Positions 2,775-42,654 of a stretch of 64,000 nt of DNA are shown here, one piece after another (positions within the stretch are counted from its first letter, which is position 1; every line of letters starts with the position of its first letter). The DNA lies in sequence record MT135025.1; one strand, given 5' to 3'. A program made the translations under genes and the position numbers. Below the pieces are notes generated by a model. The model did not search any database and was not told the origin of the DNA. It saw only the letters and a program-made list of their open reading frames with translations.

Positions 2775-4042
2775 TGGGTTCATTTAACACTACTTGCGCA
2801 ATCACTCGTACGCCAATTCAAGAAGGTGGTCTTGCGCGTGTCTTTTTCTTAGAAATGGACGCATTTGCAACAAACTATTACGGTCGTCAAGGTCTGTTTA
2901 AGAACATCATGATGGGATGTGGTTGCTACCCGTGGGATAACTTCAAGATCATCGGTTACCCTTTGCTTGGCAAATATGCTGATTACAACAATTACGAGTT
3001 TGAAGATGCAGATATGGCTAATATGACGCTGGCTGCAATCAACAAACGATACGTACCAAATCGAGTAGCTGAAGGCAAGACGCTTGAAGATTACAATGAA
3101 TATCATGATTACATGGAAATCGACGAGATTTCAGACATGAGTCAGCTTCAAGATATGGAACACAGTGGTTCGCTTCGAGTTAAAGGTGCGCATGGTAATG
3201 TAACTGCGGTTGTTAAAATGGCAATGCATGAAGAAGTGTACCAAATGATGCTTGAAGGTAACGTGACTGAGGGTTGGGGTGATGATGCGAAGACATATTC
3301 ATTTGCCGACGATTTGAAACGTCTCACAGATAAGTATAGTGGTTCAGTATCAGGTTTTGATGCATTAACCGAGCAACAACAGAAGCGAATGAATGACATG
3401 CGTGATGAGCTTTACGCTAAGGCTGACGCGGGCGAAATCAATGAACGCACTGGCGAACCATATACTCGTGAAGAGGCTGATAAGAGCTTCAACCAAATGG
3501 TTGAATGGCTTGCTGAAGACCGTATTGAGCTTGGCGGCGAACGCGCTGAATGGTTTGCACATTCATCACATAACCGAGACATGGCAGATCTTAAAGACAA
3601 TCAAGAACTAGTTCGCAAACTAGCTGAAGCAGTCGTCGGTGCAAAATGGTGTGCTCGTTGGATGATGTGCAATAACTATGAATTCGCGCCAGTGATGACA
3701 TGCGGTCAAGATTACGATACTGCTTCTCATGCGTCGCGTCTTCGTAAGCTTGCAGACATCATTGAATCGAAGAAAAACAAATATCACTACGAAGAGCACG
3801 TTGAACTTGATGTAGTTCGTTATGAGCGCGTTGAACTATCTCTGAGTAATCTGAAAGAGCGTTTTGCTGATTGGTACGATGAAGGTGATGAAGAATACCA
3901 AAATTTACTGTCAGCGATTGAAAGTGTAAAAGAACAATCAAGCTTTGTTTACGGTGATGGTTCTATTTTCGATAAATTCATTGAAGAATACGACGTTCTA
4001 CGTGATGTTGAAGAAAATACACAAATTCATTTCAAAAAGTAG
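2774..4042 (+). CDS. Hypothetical acidic protein
   Basis: 422-aa ORF; N-terminal MGSFNTTCAIT. Confidence 0.85.
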   Translation: MGSFNTTCAITRTPIQEGGLARVFFLEMDAFATNYYGRQGLFKNIMMGCGCYPWDNFKIIGYPLLGKYADYNNYEFEDADMANMTLAAINKRYVPNRVAEGKTLEDYNEYHDYMEIDEISDMSQLQDMEHSGSLRVKGAHGNVTAVVKMAMHEEVYQMMLEGNVTEGWGDDAKTYSFADDLKRLTDKYSGSVSGFDALTEQQQKRMNDMRDELYAKADAGEINERTGEPYTREEADKSFNQMVEWLAEDRIELGGERAEWFAHSSHNRDMADLKDNQELVRKLAEAVVGAKWCARWMMCNNYEFAPVMTCGQDYDTASHASRLRKLADIIESKKNKYHYEEHVELDVVRYERVELSLSNLKERFADWYDEGDEEYQNLLSAIESVKEQSSFVYGDGSIFDKFIEEYDVLRDVEENTQIHFKK

Positions 4043-8243: not shown

Positions 8244-10472
8244 TTGATGCTTGTAGTGAAGTCTTCTGGCATTACAGAAGAATTTGAAGAAAGTAAATTG
8301 ATGCGCGTACTTAGTGACGCATGTAAGAATACGACAATTGATCCACATCAATTACTTGCCCGCGTGAAAGCTCAACTTAGCGACGGGATGACGAGCAAAG
8401 ACATTCAAAAGGCAGCGATCAAAATCGCTGCCGATAGCATTTCAGTAGAAGAGCCAGATTATCAATACGTCGCGGCTCGACTGGCTATGTATGGTCTTCG
8501 CAAAGATGTATATGGTCAATTCGACCCTATTCCATTCAAACAACTCATTGAAAGAAACACTGCAATCGAAGTTTACGATTCCGAGATTCTTGAAAAATGG
8601 TCAGACTCAGAACTAGAATACCTGGAATCTCAAGTCAAGCATGAGCGCGACTTTGATTTTGCGTATGCAGGTGTAATGCAATTCAAAGAAAAATACTTGT
8701 GCAAAAACCGTGGTACTGGTGCGATTTACGAAACACCGCAATATGCTTACATGCTCATTGCTATGTGTTTGCACCAAGAAGAGAAATACGACCGATTAAA
8801 GCACGTTATTGACTTTTATAACGCTGTTTCAACTCAAAAACTTTCGCTACCTACACCGATTATGGCAGGCGTTCGTACCCCGACACGTCAATTTAGCTCG
8901 TGTGTGAAAATCGAATCTGGCGATTCGCTGCGTTCGATCAACAAGGTATCTGAAGCTATCGTTGATTACATTAGTAAACGTGCGGGTATTGGCGTAAACG
9001 GTGGTGCAATTCGAGCAGAGGGTTCGGTTGTACGTGCGGGTGAAATTCGTCACACTGGCGTAATTCCTTTCTGGAAACACTTTCAGACTGCGGTTAAATC
9101 GTGTTCTCAAGGTGGTGTACGTGGCGGTGCTGCGACTCTGACTTACCCGATCTGGCACTTAGAAGTAGAAAAGCTTCTTGTTCTGAAGAACAACAAAGGT
9201 GTTGAAGAGAACCGTATTCGTCATCTTGACTACAGCGTATCAATTAACCGATTGATGATGCAACGCCTGGTTAATAACGAGTACATCACGCTATTCAGCC
9301 CCGATGAGCGTCACGGTGCGCTTTACGGTGAGTATCACACAAACCCAGAAGAGTTTGAGCGTCTTTACCTAGAGCTTGAAGCTGATCCGAAAGTGCGCAA
9401 GAAACGCATCAAGGCAACTGAACTATTCAGTATCTTTGGTCAAGAGCGTTCAAGTACGGGTCGTATCTACCCGATCTTCGTAGATAACTTGAATGCACAG
9501 TCACCGTACATCGAAGCGATCAAGCAATCTAACTTGTGTATGGAAATCGCGCTACCGACGTACCCGCTTGGTACTTCATATGAAGAAATCGCACTTTGTA
9601 CGCTTGCTGCTTACAACTTAGGTGCAATCGAATCGCCGAGTGAATTTGCTCGACTGGCGCCAATCGTTATTCGTGCGCTTGATAATCTACTAGATTACCA
9701 AGATTATCCAGTAGAAGCCGCTGAAAAAGCAAAATATCGTCGCGCATTGGGTATCGGTATCACTAACTTTGCATATTTCTTGGCAAAGAACTTCGTTGGA
9801 TACGACTCATCAGCTAAGTATCTCGTGCATGAATGGATGGAAGCAATGTCTTACTACAACATTCAAGCATCAATGATGTTAGCAAAAGAGCGTGGCGCGA
9901 ACAAATGGCATCGTAAGACGCGCTGGGCTAAAGGTCAGTTGCCAATTGACTGGTACAATAAAAATGTTGATAAGCTTGTCAAGCCGAATTATAATCTAGA
10001 CTGGGAAGCACTTCGCGCTGACGTAATTCGTTACGGTATGCGAAATGACACCACTTCAGCTTTCATGCCATGTGAAAGTAGTTCTCAGATTAGCAACAGC
10101 ACGAACGGTATTGAGCCACCACGTGGTCTAGTATCGACTAAGCAATCAAAAGATGGCGTTTTCAACCAAGTTGTGCCTGAAGTTGACTTGCTGAAAGATG
10201 AATACGGACTTGCGTGGAAAGTTTGTGAGAAAGATAACTTTGGTTATCTGACGCTAGTTGCAATCATGCAGAAGTTTGTTGATCAAAGCATTTCAGCGAA
10301 CCAATATTACGATCCTTCTAAATTCCCAAATGGGAAGATTCCGATGGAACGTATTTTTGAAGAACTAGCGTTCTGTAGCCATTACGGTATCAAGACTCTT
10401 TATTATTCTAACACTCGTGACGGTGCTGACGGCACTGAAGACGGGGAAGATTGTGATGGGTGCAAAGTTTAA
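8244..10472 (+). CDS. nrdA: Class Ia ribonucleotide reductase alpha subunit
   Basis: ATP cone, PTPIMAG, QFSSC, QSNLCMEI, TLYY, C-terminal CxxC. Confidence 0.97.
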   Translation: MMLVVKSSGITEEFEESKLMRVLSDACKNTTIDPHQLLARVKAQLSDGMTSKDIQKAAIKIAADSISVEEPDYQYVAARLAMYGLRKDVYGQFDPIPFKQLIERNTAIEVYDSEILEKWSDSELEYLESQVKHERDFDFAYAGVMQFKEKYLCKNRGTGAIYETPQYAYMLIAMCLHQEEKYDRLKHVIDFYNAVSTQKLSLPTPIMAGVRTPTRQFSSCVKIESGDSLRSINKVSEAIVDYISKRAGIGVNGGAIRAEGSVVRAGEIRHTGVIPFWKHFQTAVKSCSQGGVRGGAATLTYPIWHLEVEKLLVLKNNKGVEENRIRHLDYSVSINRLMMQRLVNNEYITLFSPDERHGALYGEYHTNPEEFERLYLELEADPKVRKKRIKATELFSIFGQERSSTGRIYPIFVDNLNAQSPYIEAIKQSNLCMEIALPTYPLGTSYEEIALCTLAAYNLGAIESPSEFARLAPIVIRALDNLLDYQDYPVEAAEKAKYRRALGIGITNFAYFLAKNFVGYDSSAKYLVHEWMEAMSYYNIQASMMLAKERGANKWHRKTRWAKGQLPIDWYNKNVDKLVKPNYNLDWEALRADVIRYGMRNDTTSAFMPCESSSQISNSTNGIEPPRGLVSTKQSKDGVFNQVVPEVDLLKDEYGLAWKVCEKDNFGYLTLVAIMQKFVDQSISANQYYDPSKFPNGKIPMERIFEELAFCSHYGIKTLYYSNTRDGADGTEDGEDCDGCKV

Positions 10473-29401: not shown

Positions 29402-29932
29402 CTATTTGCGCCCCTTACGATTTGCCTTATTTGCTTTTCTTTTTGCTCTACGCAATTCTTTGCGTTTTGCGATTTTGTCTGCACGTCTAACTGCATCATA
29501 ATCCGCAGCACACGACGCAGCAAACGCATCAGGCTTGAAAACGGGTTCTTGACCCACGTATCCCAAGATAGTGCCCTTAGCTTCGTTATACGCAACGTGT
29601 GAACGATGGGATGGGTCTGGGTTGATGTCAACGTGAACTTCAAACCCACGAGTACCACACATTGGCTTAACACGCAGGGCGGTTTCACCTGCTTTATAGA
29701 CTTCATTCATCAAACGACTACGAATACCATCTTTACAAGACATGTACGCTGGTTCAGTTTCGATAGATTTGAATACTTGAGCGCCTTTACTACCCTCAAG
29801 GTGAATGATGATTACAGTAGCGTAACTAATCATATCACTCTTACGCTTGCTATCACACCCAACATAAATCGTACTGTTCGGATGACTGTTATTGATAGCT
29901 GTTTCAATTGCTTCCCAATCGAACATTTTCAC
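29402..29932 (-). CDS. RNase H-like YkuK-family protein
   Basis: IYVGCDS, RLMNEV, EVHVDIN, KPDAFAASCAAD. Confidence 0.8.
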   Translation of the reverse strand: MKMFDWEAIETAINNSHPNSTIYVGCDSKRKSDMISYATVIIIHLEGSKGAQVFKSIETEPAYMSCKDGIRSRLMNEVYKAGETALRVKPMCGTRGFEVHVDINPDPSHRSHVAYNEAKGTILGYVGQEPVFKPDAFAASCAADYDAVRRADKIAKRKELRRAKRKANKANRKGRK

Positions 29933-29976
29933 CTCTGTACAAAAAAGGGCAGCACAATGCCGCCCTTATCACTTAT

Positions 29977-31413
29977 TTAAAAGCTGTAGCGATCAACGCC
30001 TACAGTTTTCAGCATGATCTTGACTGGCTCAAGCTCACCACCCAACAATGAAGTCAGGATAGATGGGCTACAACCCGATACCAGTGCAGTACCCGCTTCG
30101 CCAGCTTTAACCGGAACGTTGCCAAGACGACCACGAATGTTCCAGAAGACTAGTTGTGGCATTTCATAGCCAGCACGTGCGTACATAGCTTTGATTGCGT
30201 CGAAGTTTGCACGTTCGCCGCGACCATACCAGCCGCCACCAGTGTTTGCTTGGTCGAATTCCATGTCGCTCATGATAAGCAACTTGGTTGGCATTTCTTC
30301 TTGTGAAAGATTTGCACGTTTCGCACGCTCTAACAGAACGTTAAAGCATTTACCGATGTTTGTGCTCATGTCTTCACCTGAGCGATTCATGTTGTCAAGA
30401 CGCTCTTTTAGTGAGCTACCGCGCAACTGGTGGAAGTGCGGATCGCTTGAGAACGAAATGAACTGATCTTTGAAGATGCCTTCATTGCGTTCAGCAACAT
30501 AGATGCCAAGAGACATTGCAACTTGCTTACAAGTCACACCCGAACGATCTGTACCTGCGTTGATTGGCGTGCTCATAGAGCCAGATACGTCAACAACAGG
30601 GATGATGCGCTCATCAGAGCCTTCCATGTAGTTCGGCAGAGCTTTCCATTGCTCGTTCGCTACAGACGCATTGCCATGACTAACGCTCTTAACGACATCA
30701 TATGGGAACAATGCACCAGCGTTGATCTTCGCTTCACCTTTTTGAAGTGACTCGATGTAGCTTGTGTAACGAGCAGAAGCGTTACGACCGAATGCTTGTT
30801 GATAACGAGCAGACGCTACAGATGGCAACTTACCAAAGTCGATTGCATCCCATTCTTGAGCACACATCTTCTGTTCAACAGTGTCAGACAAAAGTGCTAG
30901 AATCTTACGCCACTGCTTCGCAGTTACACCAAGAGACTTGATTGTGCGCTTGAACACATGACCGTTTTTGCTGTTTTCACGTGGGAACCACTTAGCAGCA
31001 AGACCGTTCTTGTCGTTTACAATCGCGTTTGACCACAATGTGATCGCGTCTTTCTCAAGACTTGTACCGAACGCAGAAATCAAGTCGTCGAAACGACCTA
31101 GTTCTGGAATTTTCGACATTACAGCACGAGCTACGTCAGGCTGCTCATTACAAAGTTTAGTGAATAGAGTACGGAAAGTACCACGTTCACCCGCACCACC
31201 GCGAACATCACGAGACCATAAAAGAATGCGTGTCGCTAGTTCGGGGTTTTCTGCAAACGCACGACCGAACAGTGTTTTAGACTGATCGTTACCACGCATA
31301 GCAGCAATACCGAAGAACAAGTTTAGACACTCGTTACCTGAAGTGCTGTGAGTAACTGCACCGTTTGCTGTACGTGAATCGTTTGATTGCATAGCGTTCA
31401 TAAATGCTGACAT
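29977..31413 (-). CDS. Ro60/TROVE-like DUF2828 protein with C-terminal vWA domain
   Basis: RTANGA..STSGNECLNLF, RDVRGGAGER, GRFDDL, AKWFPRE, VVDVSGSM, SDMEFD, VFWN. Confidence 0.85.
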   Translation of the reverse strand: MSAFMNAMQSNDSRTANGAVTHSTSGNECLNLFFGIAAMRGNDQSKTLFGRAFAENPELATRILLWSRDVRGGAGERGTFRTLFTKLCNEQPDVARAVMSKIPELGRFDDLISAFGTSLEKDAITLWSNAIVNDKNGLAAKWFPRENSKNGHVFKRTIKSLGVTAKQWRKILALLSDTVEQKMCAQEWDAIDFGKLPSVASARYQQAFGRNASARYTSYIESLQKGEAKINAGALFPYDVVKSVSHGNASVANEQWKALPNYMEGSDERIIPVVDVSGSMSTPINAGTDRSGVTCKQVAMSLGIYVAERNEGIFKDQFISFSSDPHFHQLRGSSLKERLDNMNRSGEDMSTNIGKCFNVLLERAKRANLSQEEMPTKLLIMSDMEFDQANTGGGWYGRGERANFDAIKAMYARAGYEMPQLVFWNIRGRLGNVPVKAGEAGTALVSGCSPSILTSLLGGELEPVKIMLKTVGVDRYSF

Positions 31414-31448
31414 TGTTTATTCCTCATATTAAATTGCTGTAAAATGTC
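31409..31448 (-). promoter_or_regulatory. Translation-initiation hairpin of the Ro-like gene carrying the CAGCAA motif
   Basis: RNA GACAUU UUA CAGCAA uuuaauau GAGGA auaaac AAUGUC; helix includes the AUG, SD lies in the loop. Confidence 0.7.
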
Positions 31449-31462
31449 GTTTTGATGTGATG

Positions 31463-31491
31463 ATTATACACGGATTTGAACCCGTGTAAAC
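31463..31491 (-). promoter_or_regulatory. T4-like early promoter for the Ro-like gene
   Basis: GTTTAC-N17-TATAAT. Confidence 0.75.
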
Positions 31492-34530: not shown

Positions 34531-34557
34531 ACAAAAAAACCTGCTCAAGGCAGGTTC
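34531..34557 (-). terminator. Terminator closing the RNA cluster
   Basis: aacctgc-cttga-gcagg + T8 on the minus strand. Confidence 0.75.
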
Positions 34558-34563
34558 TAATGT

Positions 34564-34824
34564 GCAATACACAGACATTCGAGAAGTGTTTTATCGTCTT
34601 TGCTTAAATCTCAATTGACTATCTCGATGTTTCTCATCGAGAAAATACCCATGATTCGGCATGAGACCTATTTCGTTTTACAGTACGAACACCGTCTTAA
34701 TGGTCATTTCCTACCACGAGAATGCGACAGGCTCACGTCATCACTGAGAAAGCAGCTAGTGCGCCTCATTACTATTAAAGTTTGCTTCTTTGATTAGTAA
34801 TATTGCTGTACAATGTCTTATTGC
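34564..34824 (-). ncRNA. Large structured RNA L1 (261 nt) with terminal helix + CAGCAA
   Basis: 5' GCAAUA-AGACAUU pairs with 3' AAUGUCU-UAUUGC; core shared with L2. Confidence 0.7.
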
Positions 34825-36847: not shown

Positions 36848-37061
36848 AGACAATACCGAAGTGTTTTTTCGTCTTTAACATGAATCGGAGTTGACTATCT
36901 TGTTGCTTCTCAACAAGCAAATATCGTCTGTTTCAGCGACGCGCCTATCTGACTATTTCTAGGCAGAGAGAATCTTTCCTTTCAAGCTGCACCGAAGCAC
37001 TGCCCAGGTTAAGATCATTACCATTTTTAGTAAGATTTTAATTTGTTGCTGTATATTGTCT
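36848..37061 (-). ncRNA. Large structured RNA L2 (214 nt), paralogue of L1
   Basis: AGACAAUA/UAUUGUCU termini + CAGCAA; shared core with compensatory changes. Confidence 0.7.
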
Positions 37062-37668: not shown

Positions 37669-37674
37669 GTTACT

Positions 37675-37787
37675 GAGTGTTATTACTTGCGTCGTCCAGA
37701 CCAGAGATACCAACTCTGAAAGGGAATCGAACCCCAAACATTTCTTTTCGTAAGAAGAATATTAGTAATTGTTTGCTGAAAACACTC
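37675..37787 (-). ncRNA. YrlA-like Y RNA (permuted tRNA mimic)
   Basis: Order: terminal stem + CAGCAA, T arm (GUUCGAUU), loop-closed acceptor CAGAG/CUCUG, D arm GUC-UGGAC-GAC, 3' strand. Confidence 0.75.
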
Positions 37788-37796
37788 TTCGGTATT

Positions 37797-38033: not shown

Positions 38034-38109
38034 TGGCGCTTCATGTTGGACTCGAACCAACGACTCTCTGATTAACAGTCAGACACTCTACCAACTGAGT
38101 TAATGAAGC
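38034..38109 (-). tRNA. tRNA-Asn(GUU) 1
   Basis: Cloverleaf, CCA. Confidence 0.92.
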
Positions 38110-38110
38110 G

Positions 38111-38185
38111 TGGCGGGCGTGGAGAATTTCGAAATCTCGACCTTCAAGTTAACAGCTTGCTGCTCTGCCTCTGAGCTACACACCC
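38111..38185 (-). tRNA. tRNA-Asn(GUU) 2
   Basis: Cloverleaf, CCA. Confidence 0.88.
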
Positions 38186-38189
38186 TTTA

Positions 38190-38260
38190 AATTAAACAGC
38201 AATCCTTTTCTCTTTTTCCAAATAAAAGTTTTGTATTGTTTGCTGAAAGATTGCTTAATT
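38190..38260 (-). ncRNA. Minimal Y-like RNA Y2
   Basis: AGCAAUC/GAUUGCU stem + UUU CAGCAA; shares UUCAGCAAACAAU with the YrlA-like RNA. Confidence 0.6.
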
Positions 38261-38869: not shown

Positions 38870-38879
38870 ATTATTCAAC

Positions 38880-38963
38880 AGCTTGCGTTCTTTGGTCTGT
38901 TTATCGCTGTCTGAGTACTCGTCTAGCGATCAATAGATTAAGTTGAATTGCAGTATGCAAGCT
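38880..38963 (-). ncRNA. Minimal Y-like RNA Y3
   Basis: AGCUUGC/GCAAGCU stem + AUA CUGCAA; inner AUCGCU/AGCGAU helix. Confidence 0.6.
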
Positions 38964-40740: not shown

Positions 40741-40856
40741 TGGTAGTCGGGGCTGGATTCGAACCAGCGACCACGTGCTTAACAGGCAATTGAAGGAGTG
40801 CTGGAGCGATACTTGTCAGTATCATTCTTCGTGCTCTACCACTGAGCTACCCGACT
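40741..40856 (-). ncRNA. tRNA-Asn(GUU) body with a 41-nt insert in the anticodon stem (C2)
   Basis: Removing the insert gives CGUGC-CUGUUAA-GCACG; insert has GAUACU-GACA-AGUAUC + CAGCAC. Confidence 0.8.
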
Positions 40857-42409: not shown

Positions 42410-42533
42410 TGGTGGAGAGTGATGGATTTGAACCACCGACCAAAAGATTTACCTAGTTATTAAGGTTTGCAGCATGAATGCTTGTCAGTATTCTTTAACA
42501 TTCTTTTGCTCTACCAGACTGAGCTAACTCTCC
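42410..42533 (-). ncRNA. tRNA-body chimera C3 (anticodon loop replaced by motif domain, CCA present)
   Basis: AAAGA/UCUUU stem encloses GAAU-ACUGACAAGC-AUUC + AUG CUGCAA. Confidence 0.75.
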
Positions 42534-42543
42534 AGAATTTGAG

Positions 42544-42654
42544 GGTGAAGTACAGGACTCGAACCTGCGACCTCCGGCGTGCAATACATGCAGCATGAAA
42601 TCTTAACAGATTTCTTTTTAGGCCGGCATTCTAACCAACTGAACTAACTTCACC
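42544..42654 (-). ncRNA. tRNA-Asp-like body chimera C4
   Basis: CCGGC/GCCGG stem encloses GAAAUCU-GUUA-AGAUUUC + AUG CUGCAU. Confidence 0.75.

What the first reader, a model, noticed from the sequence alone, without database searches (positions are those of the whole stretch)
31409..31448. The motif sits over the start codon of the Ro-like gene: likely autogenous translational control
Seen: the leader reads GACAUU UUA CAGCAA uuuaauau GAGGA auaaac AAUGUC. The 5' GACAUU pairs with AAUGUC, which contains the AUG, and the SD lies in the loop. It has the same architecture as Y2/Y3 and its 5' half matches L1 (GACAUU-NUA-CAGCAA). Inference: free Ro-like protein binds its own mRNA and represses translation until titrated by the Y-like RNAs. 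This is the best internal evidence linking motif and protein.
Basis: partly seen in the sequence, partly recalled or inferred. Interest (0 to 1): 0.85.

Follow-up and report, generated by a model that had tools for sequence, protein, structure and literature searches.

The report
Ro-like gene leader mimics its RNAs
The start of a phage gene for a Ro-like RNA-binding protein is wrapped in a small copy of the RNA module carried by the phage's own Y-like non-coding RNAs, which most likely lets the protein shut off its own translation, although no binding or repression has been measured.

Summary
On the minus strand, 31448..31409 reads GACAUU-UUACAGCAA-N8-GAGGA-N6-AAUGUC. The AUG of the DUF2828/DUF7788 gene lies in the 3' arm and the Shine-Dalgarno sequence lies in the loop.

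The window is a KVP40-like Vibrio phage. The predicted fold of the protein matches only Ro60 structures.

The leader element is a bona fide copy of a conserved RNA module: a 6-7 bp closing stem, one linker base, UACAGCAA, an A-rich loop, the 3' arm, then G. Five non-coding RNAs in the adjacent tRNA cluster carry this module. So do RNAs beside DUF2828 genes in Aeromonas, Felix-O1-like, Campylobacter, Listeria and Mycobacterium phages.

A covariance model built only from non-leader copies ranks the leader first in the window (29.7 bits, E about 3e-5).

Leaders of orthologues down to 58% protein identity keep the module around the ribosome-binding site, with compensatory changes:
- GACAUA/UAUGUC in one leader.
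- The 3' arm relocated onto the Shine-Dalgarno end in two others.

The hairpin alone is weak (about -3 kcal/mol), so the evidence is comparative. Autogenous translational repression is the best explanation but is untested. Two homing-endonuclease alleles and one divergent leader lack the stem.

The module also resembles dictyostelid Class I RNAs, below Rfam's threshold.

The parts
31463..31490 (-). T4-type early promoter: -35 (G)TTTACA at 31490..31485, 16-nt spacer, -10 TATAAT at 31468..31463. The predicted transcript start is near 31456-31458, 7-9 nt before the module.
   Evidence: 11 of 12 consensus matches. GTTTAC and TATAAT are conserved in orthologous leaders. The start site is inferred, not mapped.
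31408..31449 (-). Leader module enclosing the ribosome-binding site: CGACAUU (stem 5' arm) - U - UACAGCAA - 19-nt loop - AAUGUCA (stem 3' arm), followed by G at 31407.
   Evidence: Sequence. Best hit of model R1 in the window at 29.7 bits, E 3.2e-5. Descriptor hit.
31443..31448 (-). Stem 5' arm, GACAUU.
   Evidence: Invariant, or changed together with its partner, in orthologous leaders.
31434..31441 (-). Single-stranded motif UACAGCAA. The CAGCA core is invariant in 12 leaders.
   Evidence: Alignment A6. The same motif occurs in all ncRNA modules.
31421..31425 (-). Shine-Dalgarno GAGGA, inside the module loop, with 7 nt between it and the AUG.
   Evidence: Sequence. An SD lies in the loop or the 3' arm in the module-bearing orthologous leaders examined.
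31409..31414 (-). Stem 3' arm, AAUGUC, containing the start codon AUG (31413..31411) and the first two bases of the Ser codon.
   Evidence: Sequence. There is a compensatory change at the pair involving position -1 in L140.
29977..31413 (-). Ro-like RNA-binding protein gene (DUF2828 + DUF7788, 478 aa).
   Evidence: Pfam. PHROG 850 'RNA-binding protein'. AlphaFold model with pLDDT 78 whose nine best PDB matches are all Ro60, E 1e-7 to 5e-5, TM 0.46-0.56.
29945..29967 (-). Terminator-like hairpin plus U-run directly after the Ro-like gene.
29402..29932 (-). Downstream DUF458/YkuK RNase-H-like gene, syntenic with the Ro-like gene in relatives.
   Evidence: KVP40 annotation PF04308. PF04308 lies downstream in L137 and L140. 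PHROG 11311.
38880..38963 (-). Small Y-like RNA M1: AGCUUGC-A-UACUGCAA-61 nt-GCAAGCU-G, between tRNA-Tyr and tRNA-Met.
   Evidence: Conserved in KVP40, VH7D and VS1. RF01414 gives 16.7 bits.
38198..38255 (-). Small Y-like RNA M2: AGCAAUC-U-UUCAGCAA-35 nt-GAUUGCU-G.
   Evidence: R1 gives 25.1 bits. Relatives carry the covarying stem AGUAAUC/GAUUACU. RF01414 gives 27.4 bits, full length.
37674..37788 (-). Y-like RNA M3: AGAGUGU-U-UUCAGCAA ... ACACUCA-G. Its interior has a T-arm-like GGGGUUCGAUUCCCU and a D-arm-like hairpin.
36848..37061 (-). Large Y-like RNA YB: AGACAAU-A-UACAGCAA ... AUUGUCU-G.
   Evidence: The stem covaries in F86 (AGGCAAU/AUUGCCU) and in 1.081.O (AGAUAAU/AUUAUCU).
34573..34818 (-). 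AAUGUCU-G, followed by an intrinsic terminator at about 34557..34532. Its stem has the same sequence as the leader stem.

Best explanation
The 5' untranslated region of the Ro-like (DUF2828/DUF7788) gene is a minimal copy of the RNA module that defines the phage's Y-like non-coding RNAs. The module is a 6-7 bp stem joining the two ends, one linker base, the single-stranded motif UACAGCAA, an A-rich loop, and a G after the 3' arm.

In the leader the loop holds the Shine-Dalgarno sequence and the 3' arm holds the AUG. On its own the stem is too weak to stay closed, so the mRNA made from the strong early promoter is translated by default.

When the Ro-like protein exceeds the supply of its five ncRNA partners from the tRNA cluster, it binds the leader module and clamps the stem. 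It then covers positions -36 to +6 and keeps the 30S subunit off. This is autogenous translational repression by ligand mimicry. The ncRNAs, which have a full 7-bp stem, compete for the protein and relieve repression.

Shown here:
- The module exists as a conserved family.
- The leader is a significant member of it.
- The module wraps the RBS.
- It is conserved with compensatory changes.
- The protein has a Ro60-like fold.
- Modules co-occur with DUF2828 genes across distant phages.

Inferred, not shown:
- The protein binds the module.
- Binding blocks initiation.
- The ncRNAs titrate the protein.
For: 1. Family membership. Model R1, built from 22 non-leader modules of six phage groups, ranks the leader first in the 64-kb window at 29.7 bits, E 3.2e-5. 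It also finds orthologous leaders: VH7D 32.8 bits, L136 30.5, K575 26.7, 1.081.O 24.9, D479 21.5, L140 19.9.

2. Enrichment. The window has 8 descriptor hits against 1.33 +/- 1.17 in shuffles. The six credible ones are all on the gene strand between 31.4 and 39 kb. Seven-bp hits run at 13.4 per 64 kb in distant DUF2828 loci against 0.95 per 64 kb in 947 kb of control viral contigs.

3. Conservation around the RBS. Twelve distinct leaders keep G-A-N-A-U and CAGCA while the spacers vary in sequence and length.

4. Compensatory evolution of the leader stem.
- L140 has GACAUA/UAUGUC, where position -1 of the AUG changed together with its partner.
- D479 and L139 have GAAAUU paired with GAUUUC at the end of the SD.
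- D479 has lost AUGUC (its Ser codon is AGC), and there the full 7-bp stem with the A-U closing pair is restored.

5. Link between protein and RNA. Modules lie beside DUF2828 genes in several distant phages:
- Aeromonas phage 4_4572: nine copies, five of them in tandem ending 1 nt before the SD.
- Campylobacter CP81: two copies upstream.
- Listeria AG20: two copies upstream.
- Mycobacteriophage MsGreen: one copy downstream.
- Felix-O1-like EC6: four copies downstream.

6. The predicted protein fold matches Ro60 only. Ro60 proteins bind Y RNAs through a 5'/3' stem with an adjacent conserved motif, and phage Ro60 genes have Y-like RNAs just upstream (PMC4201824; PMC12135203).

7. The leader stem has only 6 bp, with a mismatched closing pair, against 7 bp in the ncRNAs. 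This fits a lower-affinity regulatory site.
Against: - There is no binding or expression data of any kind.
- The hairpin alone is about -3 kcal/mol and no better than shuffled sequence.
- The synonymous Ser codon UCU would give a seventh pair but is not used.
- Two homing-endonuclease alleles (D482, CZ01) have lost the promoter and the 5' arm. They keep only UUACAGCAAUG abutting the start codon.
- L137 has a degenerate motif and no clear stem.
- The F86 leader has UACAGCAU and R1 did not find it.
- In F86 both large ncRNAs have UACUGCAA while the leader has UACAGCA, so the leader does not track the ncRNA motif base by base.
- In Felix-O1-like, Listeria, Campylobacter and Mycobacterium phages the modules do not overlap the RBS. 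phiWae14 and Kaldavass show no module within 5-6 kb.
- The module set used for the pair counts was selected by a pairing descriptor, so its 99% pairing is partly by construction.
Confidence: 0.55

Rival explanations
1. The Ro-like protein does bind the leader module, but the consequence is not a block of initiation. The module might recruit a 3'-5' exonuclease complex (as Ro60/Y RNA/PNPase does) or the downstream RNase-H-like protein to degrade or process the mRNA. It might protect the 5' end. It might nucleate co-translational assembly of the RNP.
For: Ro60/Y RNA complexes tether PNPase in bacteria and in phage phiLo. The module sits at the extreme 5' end of the predicted transcript. A DUF458 RNase-H-like gene is syntenic downstream.
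Against: In the KVP40-like clade the module always encloses the SD and/or the AUG, even where the 3' arm has moved. A pure stability or recruitment element at the 5' end would not need that.
Confidence: 0.15
2. The leader element is a decaying remnant of a Y-like RNA gene that once lay directly upstream of the Ro-like gene, as it still does in Aeromonas 4_4572, Campylobacter CP81 and Listeria AG20. It has no regulatory role today.
For: Modules directly upstream of the gene are the common arrangement in distant phages. The stem is weak and its closing pair is mismatched. The homing-endonuclease alleles and L137 show the stem can be lost.
Against: The motif and stem are kept down to 58% protein identity while the neighbouring spacers change freely. 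There are two independent compensatory solutions for the stem. The full-length CM match has no indels.
Confidence: 0.15
3. The module is recognised by some other factor, not by the Ro-like protein. Candidates are a processing nuclease that excises these RNAs from tRNA-cluster transcripts, or an RRM-type protein such as the one reported to bind dictyostelid Class I RNAs. The leader copy would then be a processing or regulatory site for that factor.
For: The ncRNA copies sit between tRNAs and must be cut out of polycistronic transcripts. The flanks are conserved (A/AG before the stem, G/GU after it). In Dictyostelium the only protein shown to bind Class I RNA directly is the RRM protein Rnp1A (PMC7919456).
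Against: Modules track DUF2828 genes in phages of hosts from four bacterial phyla, so a shared host factor is unlikely. In MsGreen, CP81 and AG20 the modules are adjacent to the gene rather than interspersed among the tRNA genes, although in CP81 and AG20 a tRNA array lies just upstream. The protein has the fold of a Y-RNA-binding protein.
Confidence: 0.1
4. Chance resemblance: an A/U-rich leader happens to contain the motif and a 6-nt complement that includes the start codon.
For: The hairpin energy is no better than shuffles. AAUGUC is fixed by the Met-Ser coding sequence, which is also present in an Aeromonas phage that lacks the motif.
Against:: an exact 15-mer match, CM E about 3e-5, 1 of 116 in the chance control, and conservation with compensatory changes.
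Confidence: 0.02

Closest known systems
Autogenous translational repression by mimicry of the primary RNA ligand. Examples from textbook knowledge: E. coli ribosomal proteins L1, S8, L20 and S15; ThrRS on the thrS leader; and in T4-type phages gp32, gp43 and RegA.
   Same: An RNA-binding protein's own mRNA carries, over its ribosome-binding site, a reduced and weaker copy of the structure the protein binds in its main RNA partner. Excess free protein would close the site.
   Different: The regulator would be a Ro60-fold protein and the ligand a Y-like ncRNA. The papers searched here do not report that combination. Nothing has been measured.
Ro60 / Y RNA ribonucleoproteins, including bacterial Rsr-YrlA and Thermus phage phiLo Ro60-Yrl1/2 (PMC4201824, PMC12135203).
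   Same: The protein has a ring-plus-vWA fold by prediction. The ncRNAs are closed by a 5'/3' stem with a conserved motif next to the 5' arm and variable interiors. One RNA has T-arm and D-arm-like pieces (M3). The RNAs are encoded on the same strand near the protein gene, in an RNA-repair and tRNA context.
   Different: The protein matches Pfam DUF2828/DUF7788, not TROVE, and sequence search of the PDB does not find Ro60. The motif is UACAGCAA, not GNCGAA(N)G. Neither the Y_RNA nor the YrlA Rfam model matches: the only YrlA hit is 18.6 bits at 38051..38166, over the two tandem tRNA-Asn genes.
Dictyostelid Class I RNAs (Rfam RF01414; PMC7919456).
   Same: The module shares the 6-bp stem joining the 5' and 3' ends, the motif (CC)UUACAGCAA directly after the 5' arm, an A-rich stretch before the 3' arm, an AAG-type start, a CUG(U) end and a length of about 60 nt. 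RF01414 aligns full length to the phage modules.
   Different: Scores are 17-30 bits, below the gathering score of 41.5. The KVP40-type leader gets no hit at all. Class I RNAs are reported as unique to Dictyostelia, have a DUSE promoter, and their only proven partner is an RRM protein. Whether this is homology or convergence is unresolved.

Membership tests
Autogenous translational operator by ligand mimicry | The regulator's own mRNA carries a site resembling its primary RNA ligand. | tested here: met
   A CM built from non-leader modules scores the leader 29.7 bits, E 3.2e-5. The 15-mer is shared with ncRNA YA.
Autogenous translational operator by ligand mimicry | The site overlaps the ribosome-binding site. 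| tested here: met
   The SD is in the loop and the AUG is in the 3' arm. The same holds in most orthologues. In D479 and L139 the 3' arm lies on the end of the SD.
Autogenous translational operator by ligand mimicry | The protein binds the site and represses translation, and the primary ligand relieves the repression. | not testable with these tools
   This needs binding assays, reporter fusions and toeprinting.
Ro60 / TROVE proteins | A HEAT-repeat ring followed by a vWA domain. | tested here: met
   The nine best PDB matches of the AlphaFold model are all Ro60, E 1.1e-7 to 4.7e-5, TM 0.46-0.56, over about 510-560 aligned columns. This rests on a predicted structure only.
Ro60 / TROVE proteins | Sequence-level match to TROVE (Pfam) or to solved Ro60 chains. 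| tested here: not met
   Pfam gives DUF2828 and DUF7788 only. phmmer against the PDB finds no Ro60.
Y RNA / YrlA (Rfam RF00019, RF02553) | A closing 5'/3' stem with an adjacent conserved protein-binding motif. | tested here: met
   The stem covaries in every copy, and a motif lies next to the 5' arm.
Y RNA / YrlA (Rfam RF00019, RF02553) | The GNCGAAN0-1G / GGUCCGA-type motif, and an Rfam model score at or above the gathering score. | tested here: not met
   The motif is UACAGCAA. There is no Y_RNA or YrlA hit on any module.
Y RNA / YrlA (Rfam RF00019, RF02553) | At least one RNA with a tRNA-like domain. | tested here: inconclusive
   M3 and EC6 RNA 4 contain T-arm-like and D-arm-like hairpins. 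L011 3530-3646 is a tRNA-like RNA with the module in its insert. No fold model was tested.
Dictyostelid Class I RNA (RF01414) | A 6-bp 5'/3' stem, an 11-nt motif next to the 5' arm, an AAG start, a CUGU end and a length of about 60 nt. | tested here: met
   The consensus of 22 phage modules is nAAGAnUnC-U-UACAGCAA...CUGUuu. The features are as described in PMC7919456. The leader itself has AACG... and ...CAGC at its ends, so it meets the end features only in part.
Dictyostelid Class I RNA (RF01414) | Rfam gathering score of 41.5 bits. | tested here: not met
   The best phage modules score 29.8 bits. M2 scores 27.4 and M1 16.7. The leader gets no hit at E <= 10.
Dictyostelid Class I RNA (RF01414) | A DUSE promoter about 60 nt upstream, and dictyostelid origin. 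| tested here: not met
   The phage copies are cut from tRNA-cluster transcripts or, for the leader, follow a T4-type early promoter.

The most novel reading that the evidence does not exclude
The stem-UACAGCAA module is the conserved ligand of the very large DUF2828/DUF7788 family of Ro-fold proteins, which has more than 7,700 homologues and occurs in 711 phage records. On this reading it is the same kind of RNA as the dictyostelid 'Class I RNAs', which are currently thought to be unique to social amoebae and to lack a defined core partner. The KVP40-type leader would then be the first case of a Ro-type protein controlling its own synthesis through a Y-RNA mimic. It would also point to DUF2828-type proteins as the missing partner of Class I RNAs.
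Probability: 0.3. Interest if true: 0.9.

Novelty: new variant of a known kind. Interest (0 to 1): 0.8.

Why it matters
If the mechanism holds, three things follow.

- It gives internal genetic evidence of which RNA feature a huge uncharacterised family of phage Ro-like proteins recognises: a short closing stem plus UACAGCAA.
- It adds a Ro/Y-RNA system to the classic list of regulators that control their own translation by ligand mimicry. This comes with a natural series of compensatory variants ready for testing.
- It defines an RNA family absent from Rfam that spans phages of Proteobacteria, Campylobacterota, Firmicutes and Actinobacteria. That family looks like dictyostelid Class I RNAs, so the question of what Class I RNAs bind becomes directly testable.

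Tried and rejected
- **Collection scan.** An exact-pattern scan of IMG/VR for GACATTNTACAGCAA returned 118 loci that were essentially all chance matches. One apparent hit (L105) had no tRNAs and no module features. I reused these loci as a negative control.
- **Split-RNA idea.** The leader might have been the 5' half of an ncRNA whose 3' half lies after the operon. No AWUGUCUGU or 3'-domain sequence follows the DUF2828 or DUF458 genes, only terminator hairpins.
- **Second UACAGCAA inside the CDS** (31372..31365). These are the Thr-Ala-Asn codons, and the sequence is not kept at RNA level in VH7D or 1.081.O. Coincidence.
- **MotA-box or promoter reading.** The reverse complement TTGCTGTA resembles a T4 middle-promoter box. 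I rejected this because of the orientation, the stem covariation and the motif's presence in Listeria and Mycobacterium phages.
- **Thermodynamic support.** There is none.
- **MAFFT alignment of full-length modules.** It split the 3' arm. I therefore built the model from modules whose loops were cut to the first 10 and last 9 nt. This favours short loops such as the leader's. The E-value against random sequence still stands, but the ranking above M1 and M2 is inflated.
- **Rfam.** At gathering and E-value thresholds there is no described family for YA, YB or the leader.
- **Literature.** Searches for DUF2828, a Ro-like phage ncRNA or autoregulation found nothing relevant. Two wanted papers (Sim 2020 review, Avesson 2011) are not held.
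Full report
**What the window is**

The 2.4 kb around the finding is 100% identical to Vibrio phage V07 and 97.7% identical to KVP40, a T4-like schizo-T4 phage. All genes here are on the minus strand. The ORF 29977..31413 (478 aa) matches Pfam DUF7788 (1.2e-45) and DUF2828 (5.9e-29) and PHROG 850 'RNA-binding protein'. A terminator-like hairpin follows it, then a DUF458/YkuK RNase-H-like gene. Upstream lies a cluster of 28 tRNA genes.

**Checking the observation**

The ATG is at 31413..31411. A T4-type early promoter lies just upstream: GTTTACA, a 16-nt spacer, then TATAAT, with 11 of 12 consensus matches. The predicted transcript therefore starts 7-9 nt before GACAUU.

The 15-mer GACATTNTACAGCAA occurs exactly twice in the window. 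One copy is the leader. The other is at 34817, the 5' end of a 250-nt non-coding RNA (YA). A one-mismatch copy, GACAAU..., is at 37060, the 5' end of a paralogous RNA (YB).

**The RNA family behind the motif**

YA and YB align with each other and with orthologues in KVP40, VH7D, VS1, nt-1 and K575. RNAalifold closes both with a 7-bp stem, AGACAWU/AWUGUCU. This stem covaries in F86 (AGGCAAU/AUUGCCU) and in 1.081.O (AGAUAAU/AUUAUCU).

I wrote a descriptor for the module: a 7-nt stem, one linker base, WNCHGCAA, a loop, the 3' arm, then G. It finds 8 sites in the window against 1.33 +/- 1.17 in dinucleotide shuffles. The credible sites are all on the gene strand:

| Site | Coordinates (minus strand) |
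|---|---|
| M1 | 38963..38880 |
| M2 | 38255..38198 |
| M3 | 37788..37674 |
| YB | 37061..36848 |
| YA | 34818..34573 |
| Leader | 31449..31408 |

The remaining hits lie inside coding sequences and look like chance.

The same module appears beside DUF2828 genes in very distant phages:

| Phage | Copies | Position relative to the DUF2828 gene |
|---|---|---|
| Aeromonas 4_4572 | 9 | Five in tandem directly upstream; the last ends 1 nt before the SD |
| Felix-O1-like EC6 | 4 | Downstream, among tRNAs |
| Campylobacter CP81 | 2 | Upstream |
| Listeria AG20 | 2 | Upstream |
| Mycobacteriophage MsGreen | 1 | Just downstream |

The stem sequence differs in almost every copy, while U-UACAGCAA and the trailing G stay. 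Seven-bp descriptor hits run at 13.4 per 64 kb in these loci, against 0.95 per 64 kb in 947 kb of control viral contigs.

No Rfam family reaches threshold on any copy.

**Is the leader a member?**

I built a covariance model from 22 non-leader modules, with loops trimmed so that the arms align. Searched with filters off, it ranks the leader first in the window: 29.7 bits, E 3.2e-5, full length, no indels. The trimming favours short loops, so the rank above M1 and M2 is inflated. The E-value against random sequence is not.

As an empirical control, I used the 116 chance occurrences of the same 15-mer in unrelated contigs. Only one has a 6-bp partner plus G within 100 nt, and none has one within 40 nt.

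**Conservation of the leader**

I read leaders from 12 distinct homing-endonuclease-free relatives spanning 100% to 58% protein identity. The promoter hexamers, G-A-N-A-U and CAGCA are kept. The spacers on both sides of the motif change in sequence and in length, and the loop ranges from 12 to 33 nt.

Three different stem solutions exist:

- **GACAUU/AAUGUC** in most leaders.
- **GACAUA/UAUGUC** in L140. This is a double change at the pair that involves position -1 of the start codon.
- **GAAAUU/GAUUUC** in D479 and L139. Here the 3' arm has moved onto the end of the SD. In D479 the Ser codon is AGC, so AUGUC no longer exists.

In the module-bearing leaders examined, the SD is in the loop or in the 3' arm. 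The model finds eight of these leaders at E <= 1.

There are exceptions:

- L137 has a degenerate motif and no clear stem.
- The F86 leader has UACAGCAU.
- Two alleles, D482 and CZ01, carry a GIY-YIG homing endonuclease inserted divergently upstream. They have lost both the promoter and the 5' arm. They retain UUACAGCAAU, which now abuts the AUG.

**Energetics**

The stem is the minimum-free-energy structure in four of six leaders. It is worth only about -3 kcal/mol and is no better than shuffled sequence. It therefore cannot act as a stand-alone structural switch. Any function needs a ligand that clamps it.

**The protein**

An AlphaFold model from a 39-sequence alignment has pLDDT 78 and pTM 0.74. 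It shows an all-helical N-terminal two-thirds and an alpha/beta C-terminal third. Its nine best PDB matches are all Ro60, at E 1e-7 to 5e-5 and TM 0.46-0.56 over nearly the full length: Thermus phage phiLo, Xenopus and human. vWA domains follow. Sequence search alone does not see this relationship.

Ro60 proteins bind Y RNAs through a 5'/3' stem and an adjacent conserved motif. Phage phiLo Ro60 has two Y-like RNAs directly upstream of its gene (PMC4201824, PMC12135203). The genomic context in relatives is RNA repair, with RtcB-type and Rnl ligases and a CCA-adding enzyme.

**Most likely mechanism**

The leader is a reduced, weaker copy of the protein's ncRNA ligand, with 6 bp instead of 7 and a mismatched closing pair. 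It is wrapped around the ribosome-binding site of the protein's own early mRNA. The best reading is autogenous translational repression by ligand mimicry, relieved when the five ncRNAs of the tRNA cluster take up the protein.

The module, its significance, its position over the RBS, its conservation with compensatory changes, the Ro-like fold and the gene-RNA co-occurrence are all shown here. Binding, repression and titration are inferred.

Four rivals remain:

- Protein binding has a different outcome, such as mRNA decay, protection or assembly.
- The element is a vestigial upstream Y-like RNA gene.
- A different factor recognises the module.
- The resemblance is chance, which is now very unlikely.

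**Comparison with known systems**

The mechanism belongs to the well-known class of autogenous translational operators: ribosomal proteins, ThrRS, and T4 gp32, gp43 and RegA. The RNP resembles Ro60/Y RNA in fold and RNA architecture. It fails the sequence-defined membership tests for TROVE, the GNCGAA motif and the Rfam Y_RNA and YrlA models.

Unexpectedly, Rfam's Dictyostelium Class I RNA model (RF01414) aligns full length to seven Aeromonas-phage modules and to M2 and M1 of this window. The model's consensus is GaUcuC-CUUACAGCAA...GagAuC-UG. Scores are 17-30 bits, below the gathering score of 41.5, and the leader gets no hit.

The published Class I features all hold for the phage modules: a 6-bp end-joining stem, an 11-nt motif next to the 5' arm, an AAG start, a CUGU end and a length of about 60 nt. 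That paper reports the class as unique to Dictyostelia (PMC7919456). Whether this is common descent or convergence could not be tested here.

**Verdict**

I rate it as a new variant of a known kind of regulation, resting on an RNA family that appears to be undescribed for phages.

Noticed in passing
window 42653..42544, 42533..42413 and 40856..40744 (minus strand): Three tRNA-like RNAs of 110-121 nt score as tRNA in Rfam (50-55 bits) but ARAGORN does not call them. Each has an insert of about 45 nt in the anticodon region. Two of the inserts carry a hairpin followed by a motif-like AUGCUGCAA or GCUCCAGCAC.
   Followed up: partly
L011 (Aeromonas phage 4_4572) 3530-3646: A tRNA-like RNA (Rfam tRNA, 49 bits, 117 nt) whose insert contains UUCCU-UACAGCAA...AGGGAA. 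This is the module grafted into a tRNA frame, reminiscent of tRNA-like Y RNAs.
   Followed up: partly
L011 5026-5993; L131 4823-4973; L132 4664-4808; L133 6686-6740; L009 7754-8522: Arrays of stem-UACAGCAA modules lie next to DUF2828 genes in Aeromonas, Campylobacter, Listeria, Mycobacterium and Felix-O1-like phages. Some are annotated as small hypothetical proteins (MsGreen gene 55, CP81 ORF140).
   Followed up: yes
window 38254..38197 and 38962..38879; L011 modules: Sub-threshold, full-length matches to Rfam RF01414 (Dictyostelium Class I RNA). The literature describes that class as restricted to social amoebae.
   Followed up: partly
window 31488..31467: The promoter spacer is a palindrome, CACGGGTTCAAATCCGTG, with a T-loop-like centre. 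Its arms covary among relatives. Read on the plus strand it scores as terminator-like, followed by a T-run.
   Followed up: no
L010 (D482) 9547-10137 and L130 (CZ01) 3053-3646: A GIY-YIG homing endonuclease gene is inserted divergently, immediately upstream of the Ro-like gene, in two different phage lineages. It replaces the promoter and the 5' arm and recodes the N-terminus (MTSLF... instead of MSAF...). UUACAGCAAU is retained next to the AUG.
   Followed up: partly
window 37788..37674 (M3); L009 8397-8522: The longer module RNAs contain a T-arm-like GGGGUUCGAUUCCCU / GAAGGUUCGAUUACUUC followed by a D-arm-like hairpin. This is a permuted tRNA-like interior.
   Followed up: no
window 29402..29932 (minus strand): A DUF458/YkuK RNase-H-like gene directly follows the Ro-like gene. 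It keeps this position, or lies within 1 kb downstream, in relatives down to 58% identity. It may be an enzymatic partner.
   Followed up: partly
window 31372..31365 (minus strand): A second UACAGCAA lies inside the coding sequence (codons Thr-Ala-Asn). It is not kept at RNA level in VH7D or 1.081.O, so it is a coding coincidence.
   Followed up: yes
window 34557..34532 (minus strand): An intrinsic terminator (AACCUGC-CUUGA-GCAGGUU plus a U-run) lies directly after ncRNA YA. YA is therefore the last product of the tRNA-cluster transcript.
   Followed up: no
L008 (phiWae14) and L134 (Kaldavass): These two phages encode DUF2828 proteins, but neither the descriptor nor the covariance model finds a module within 5-6 kb. 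The RNAs may lie elsewhere in these genomes or may be absent.
   Followed up: no
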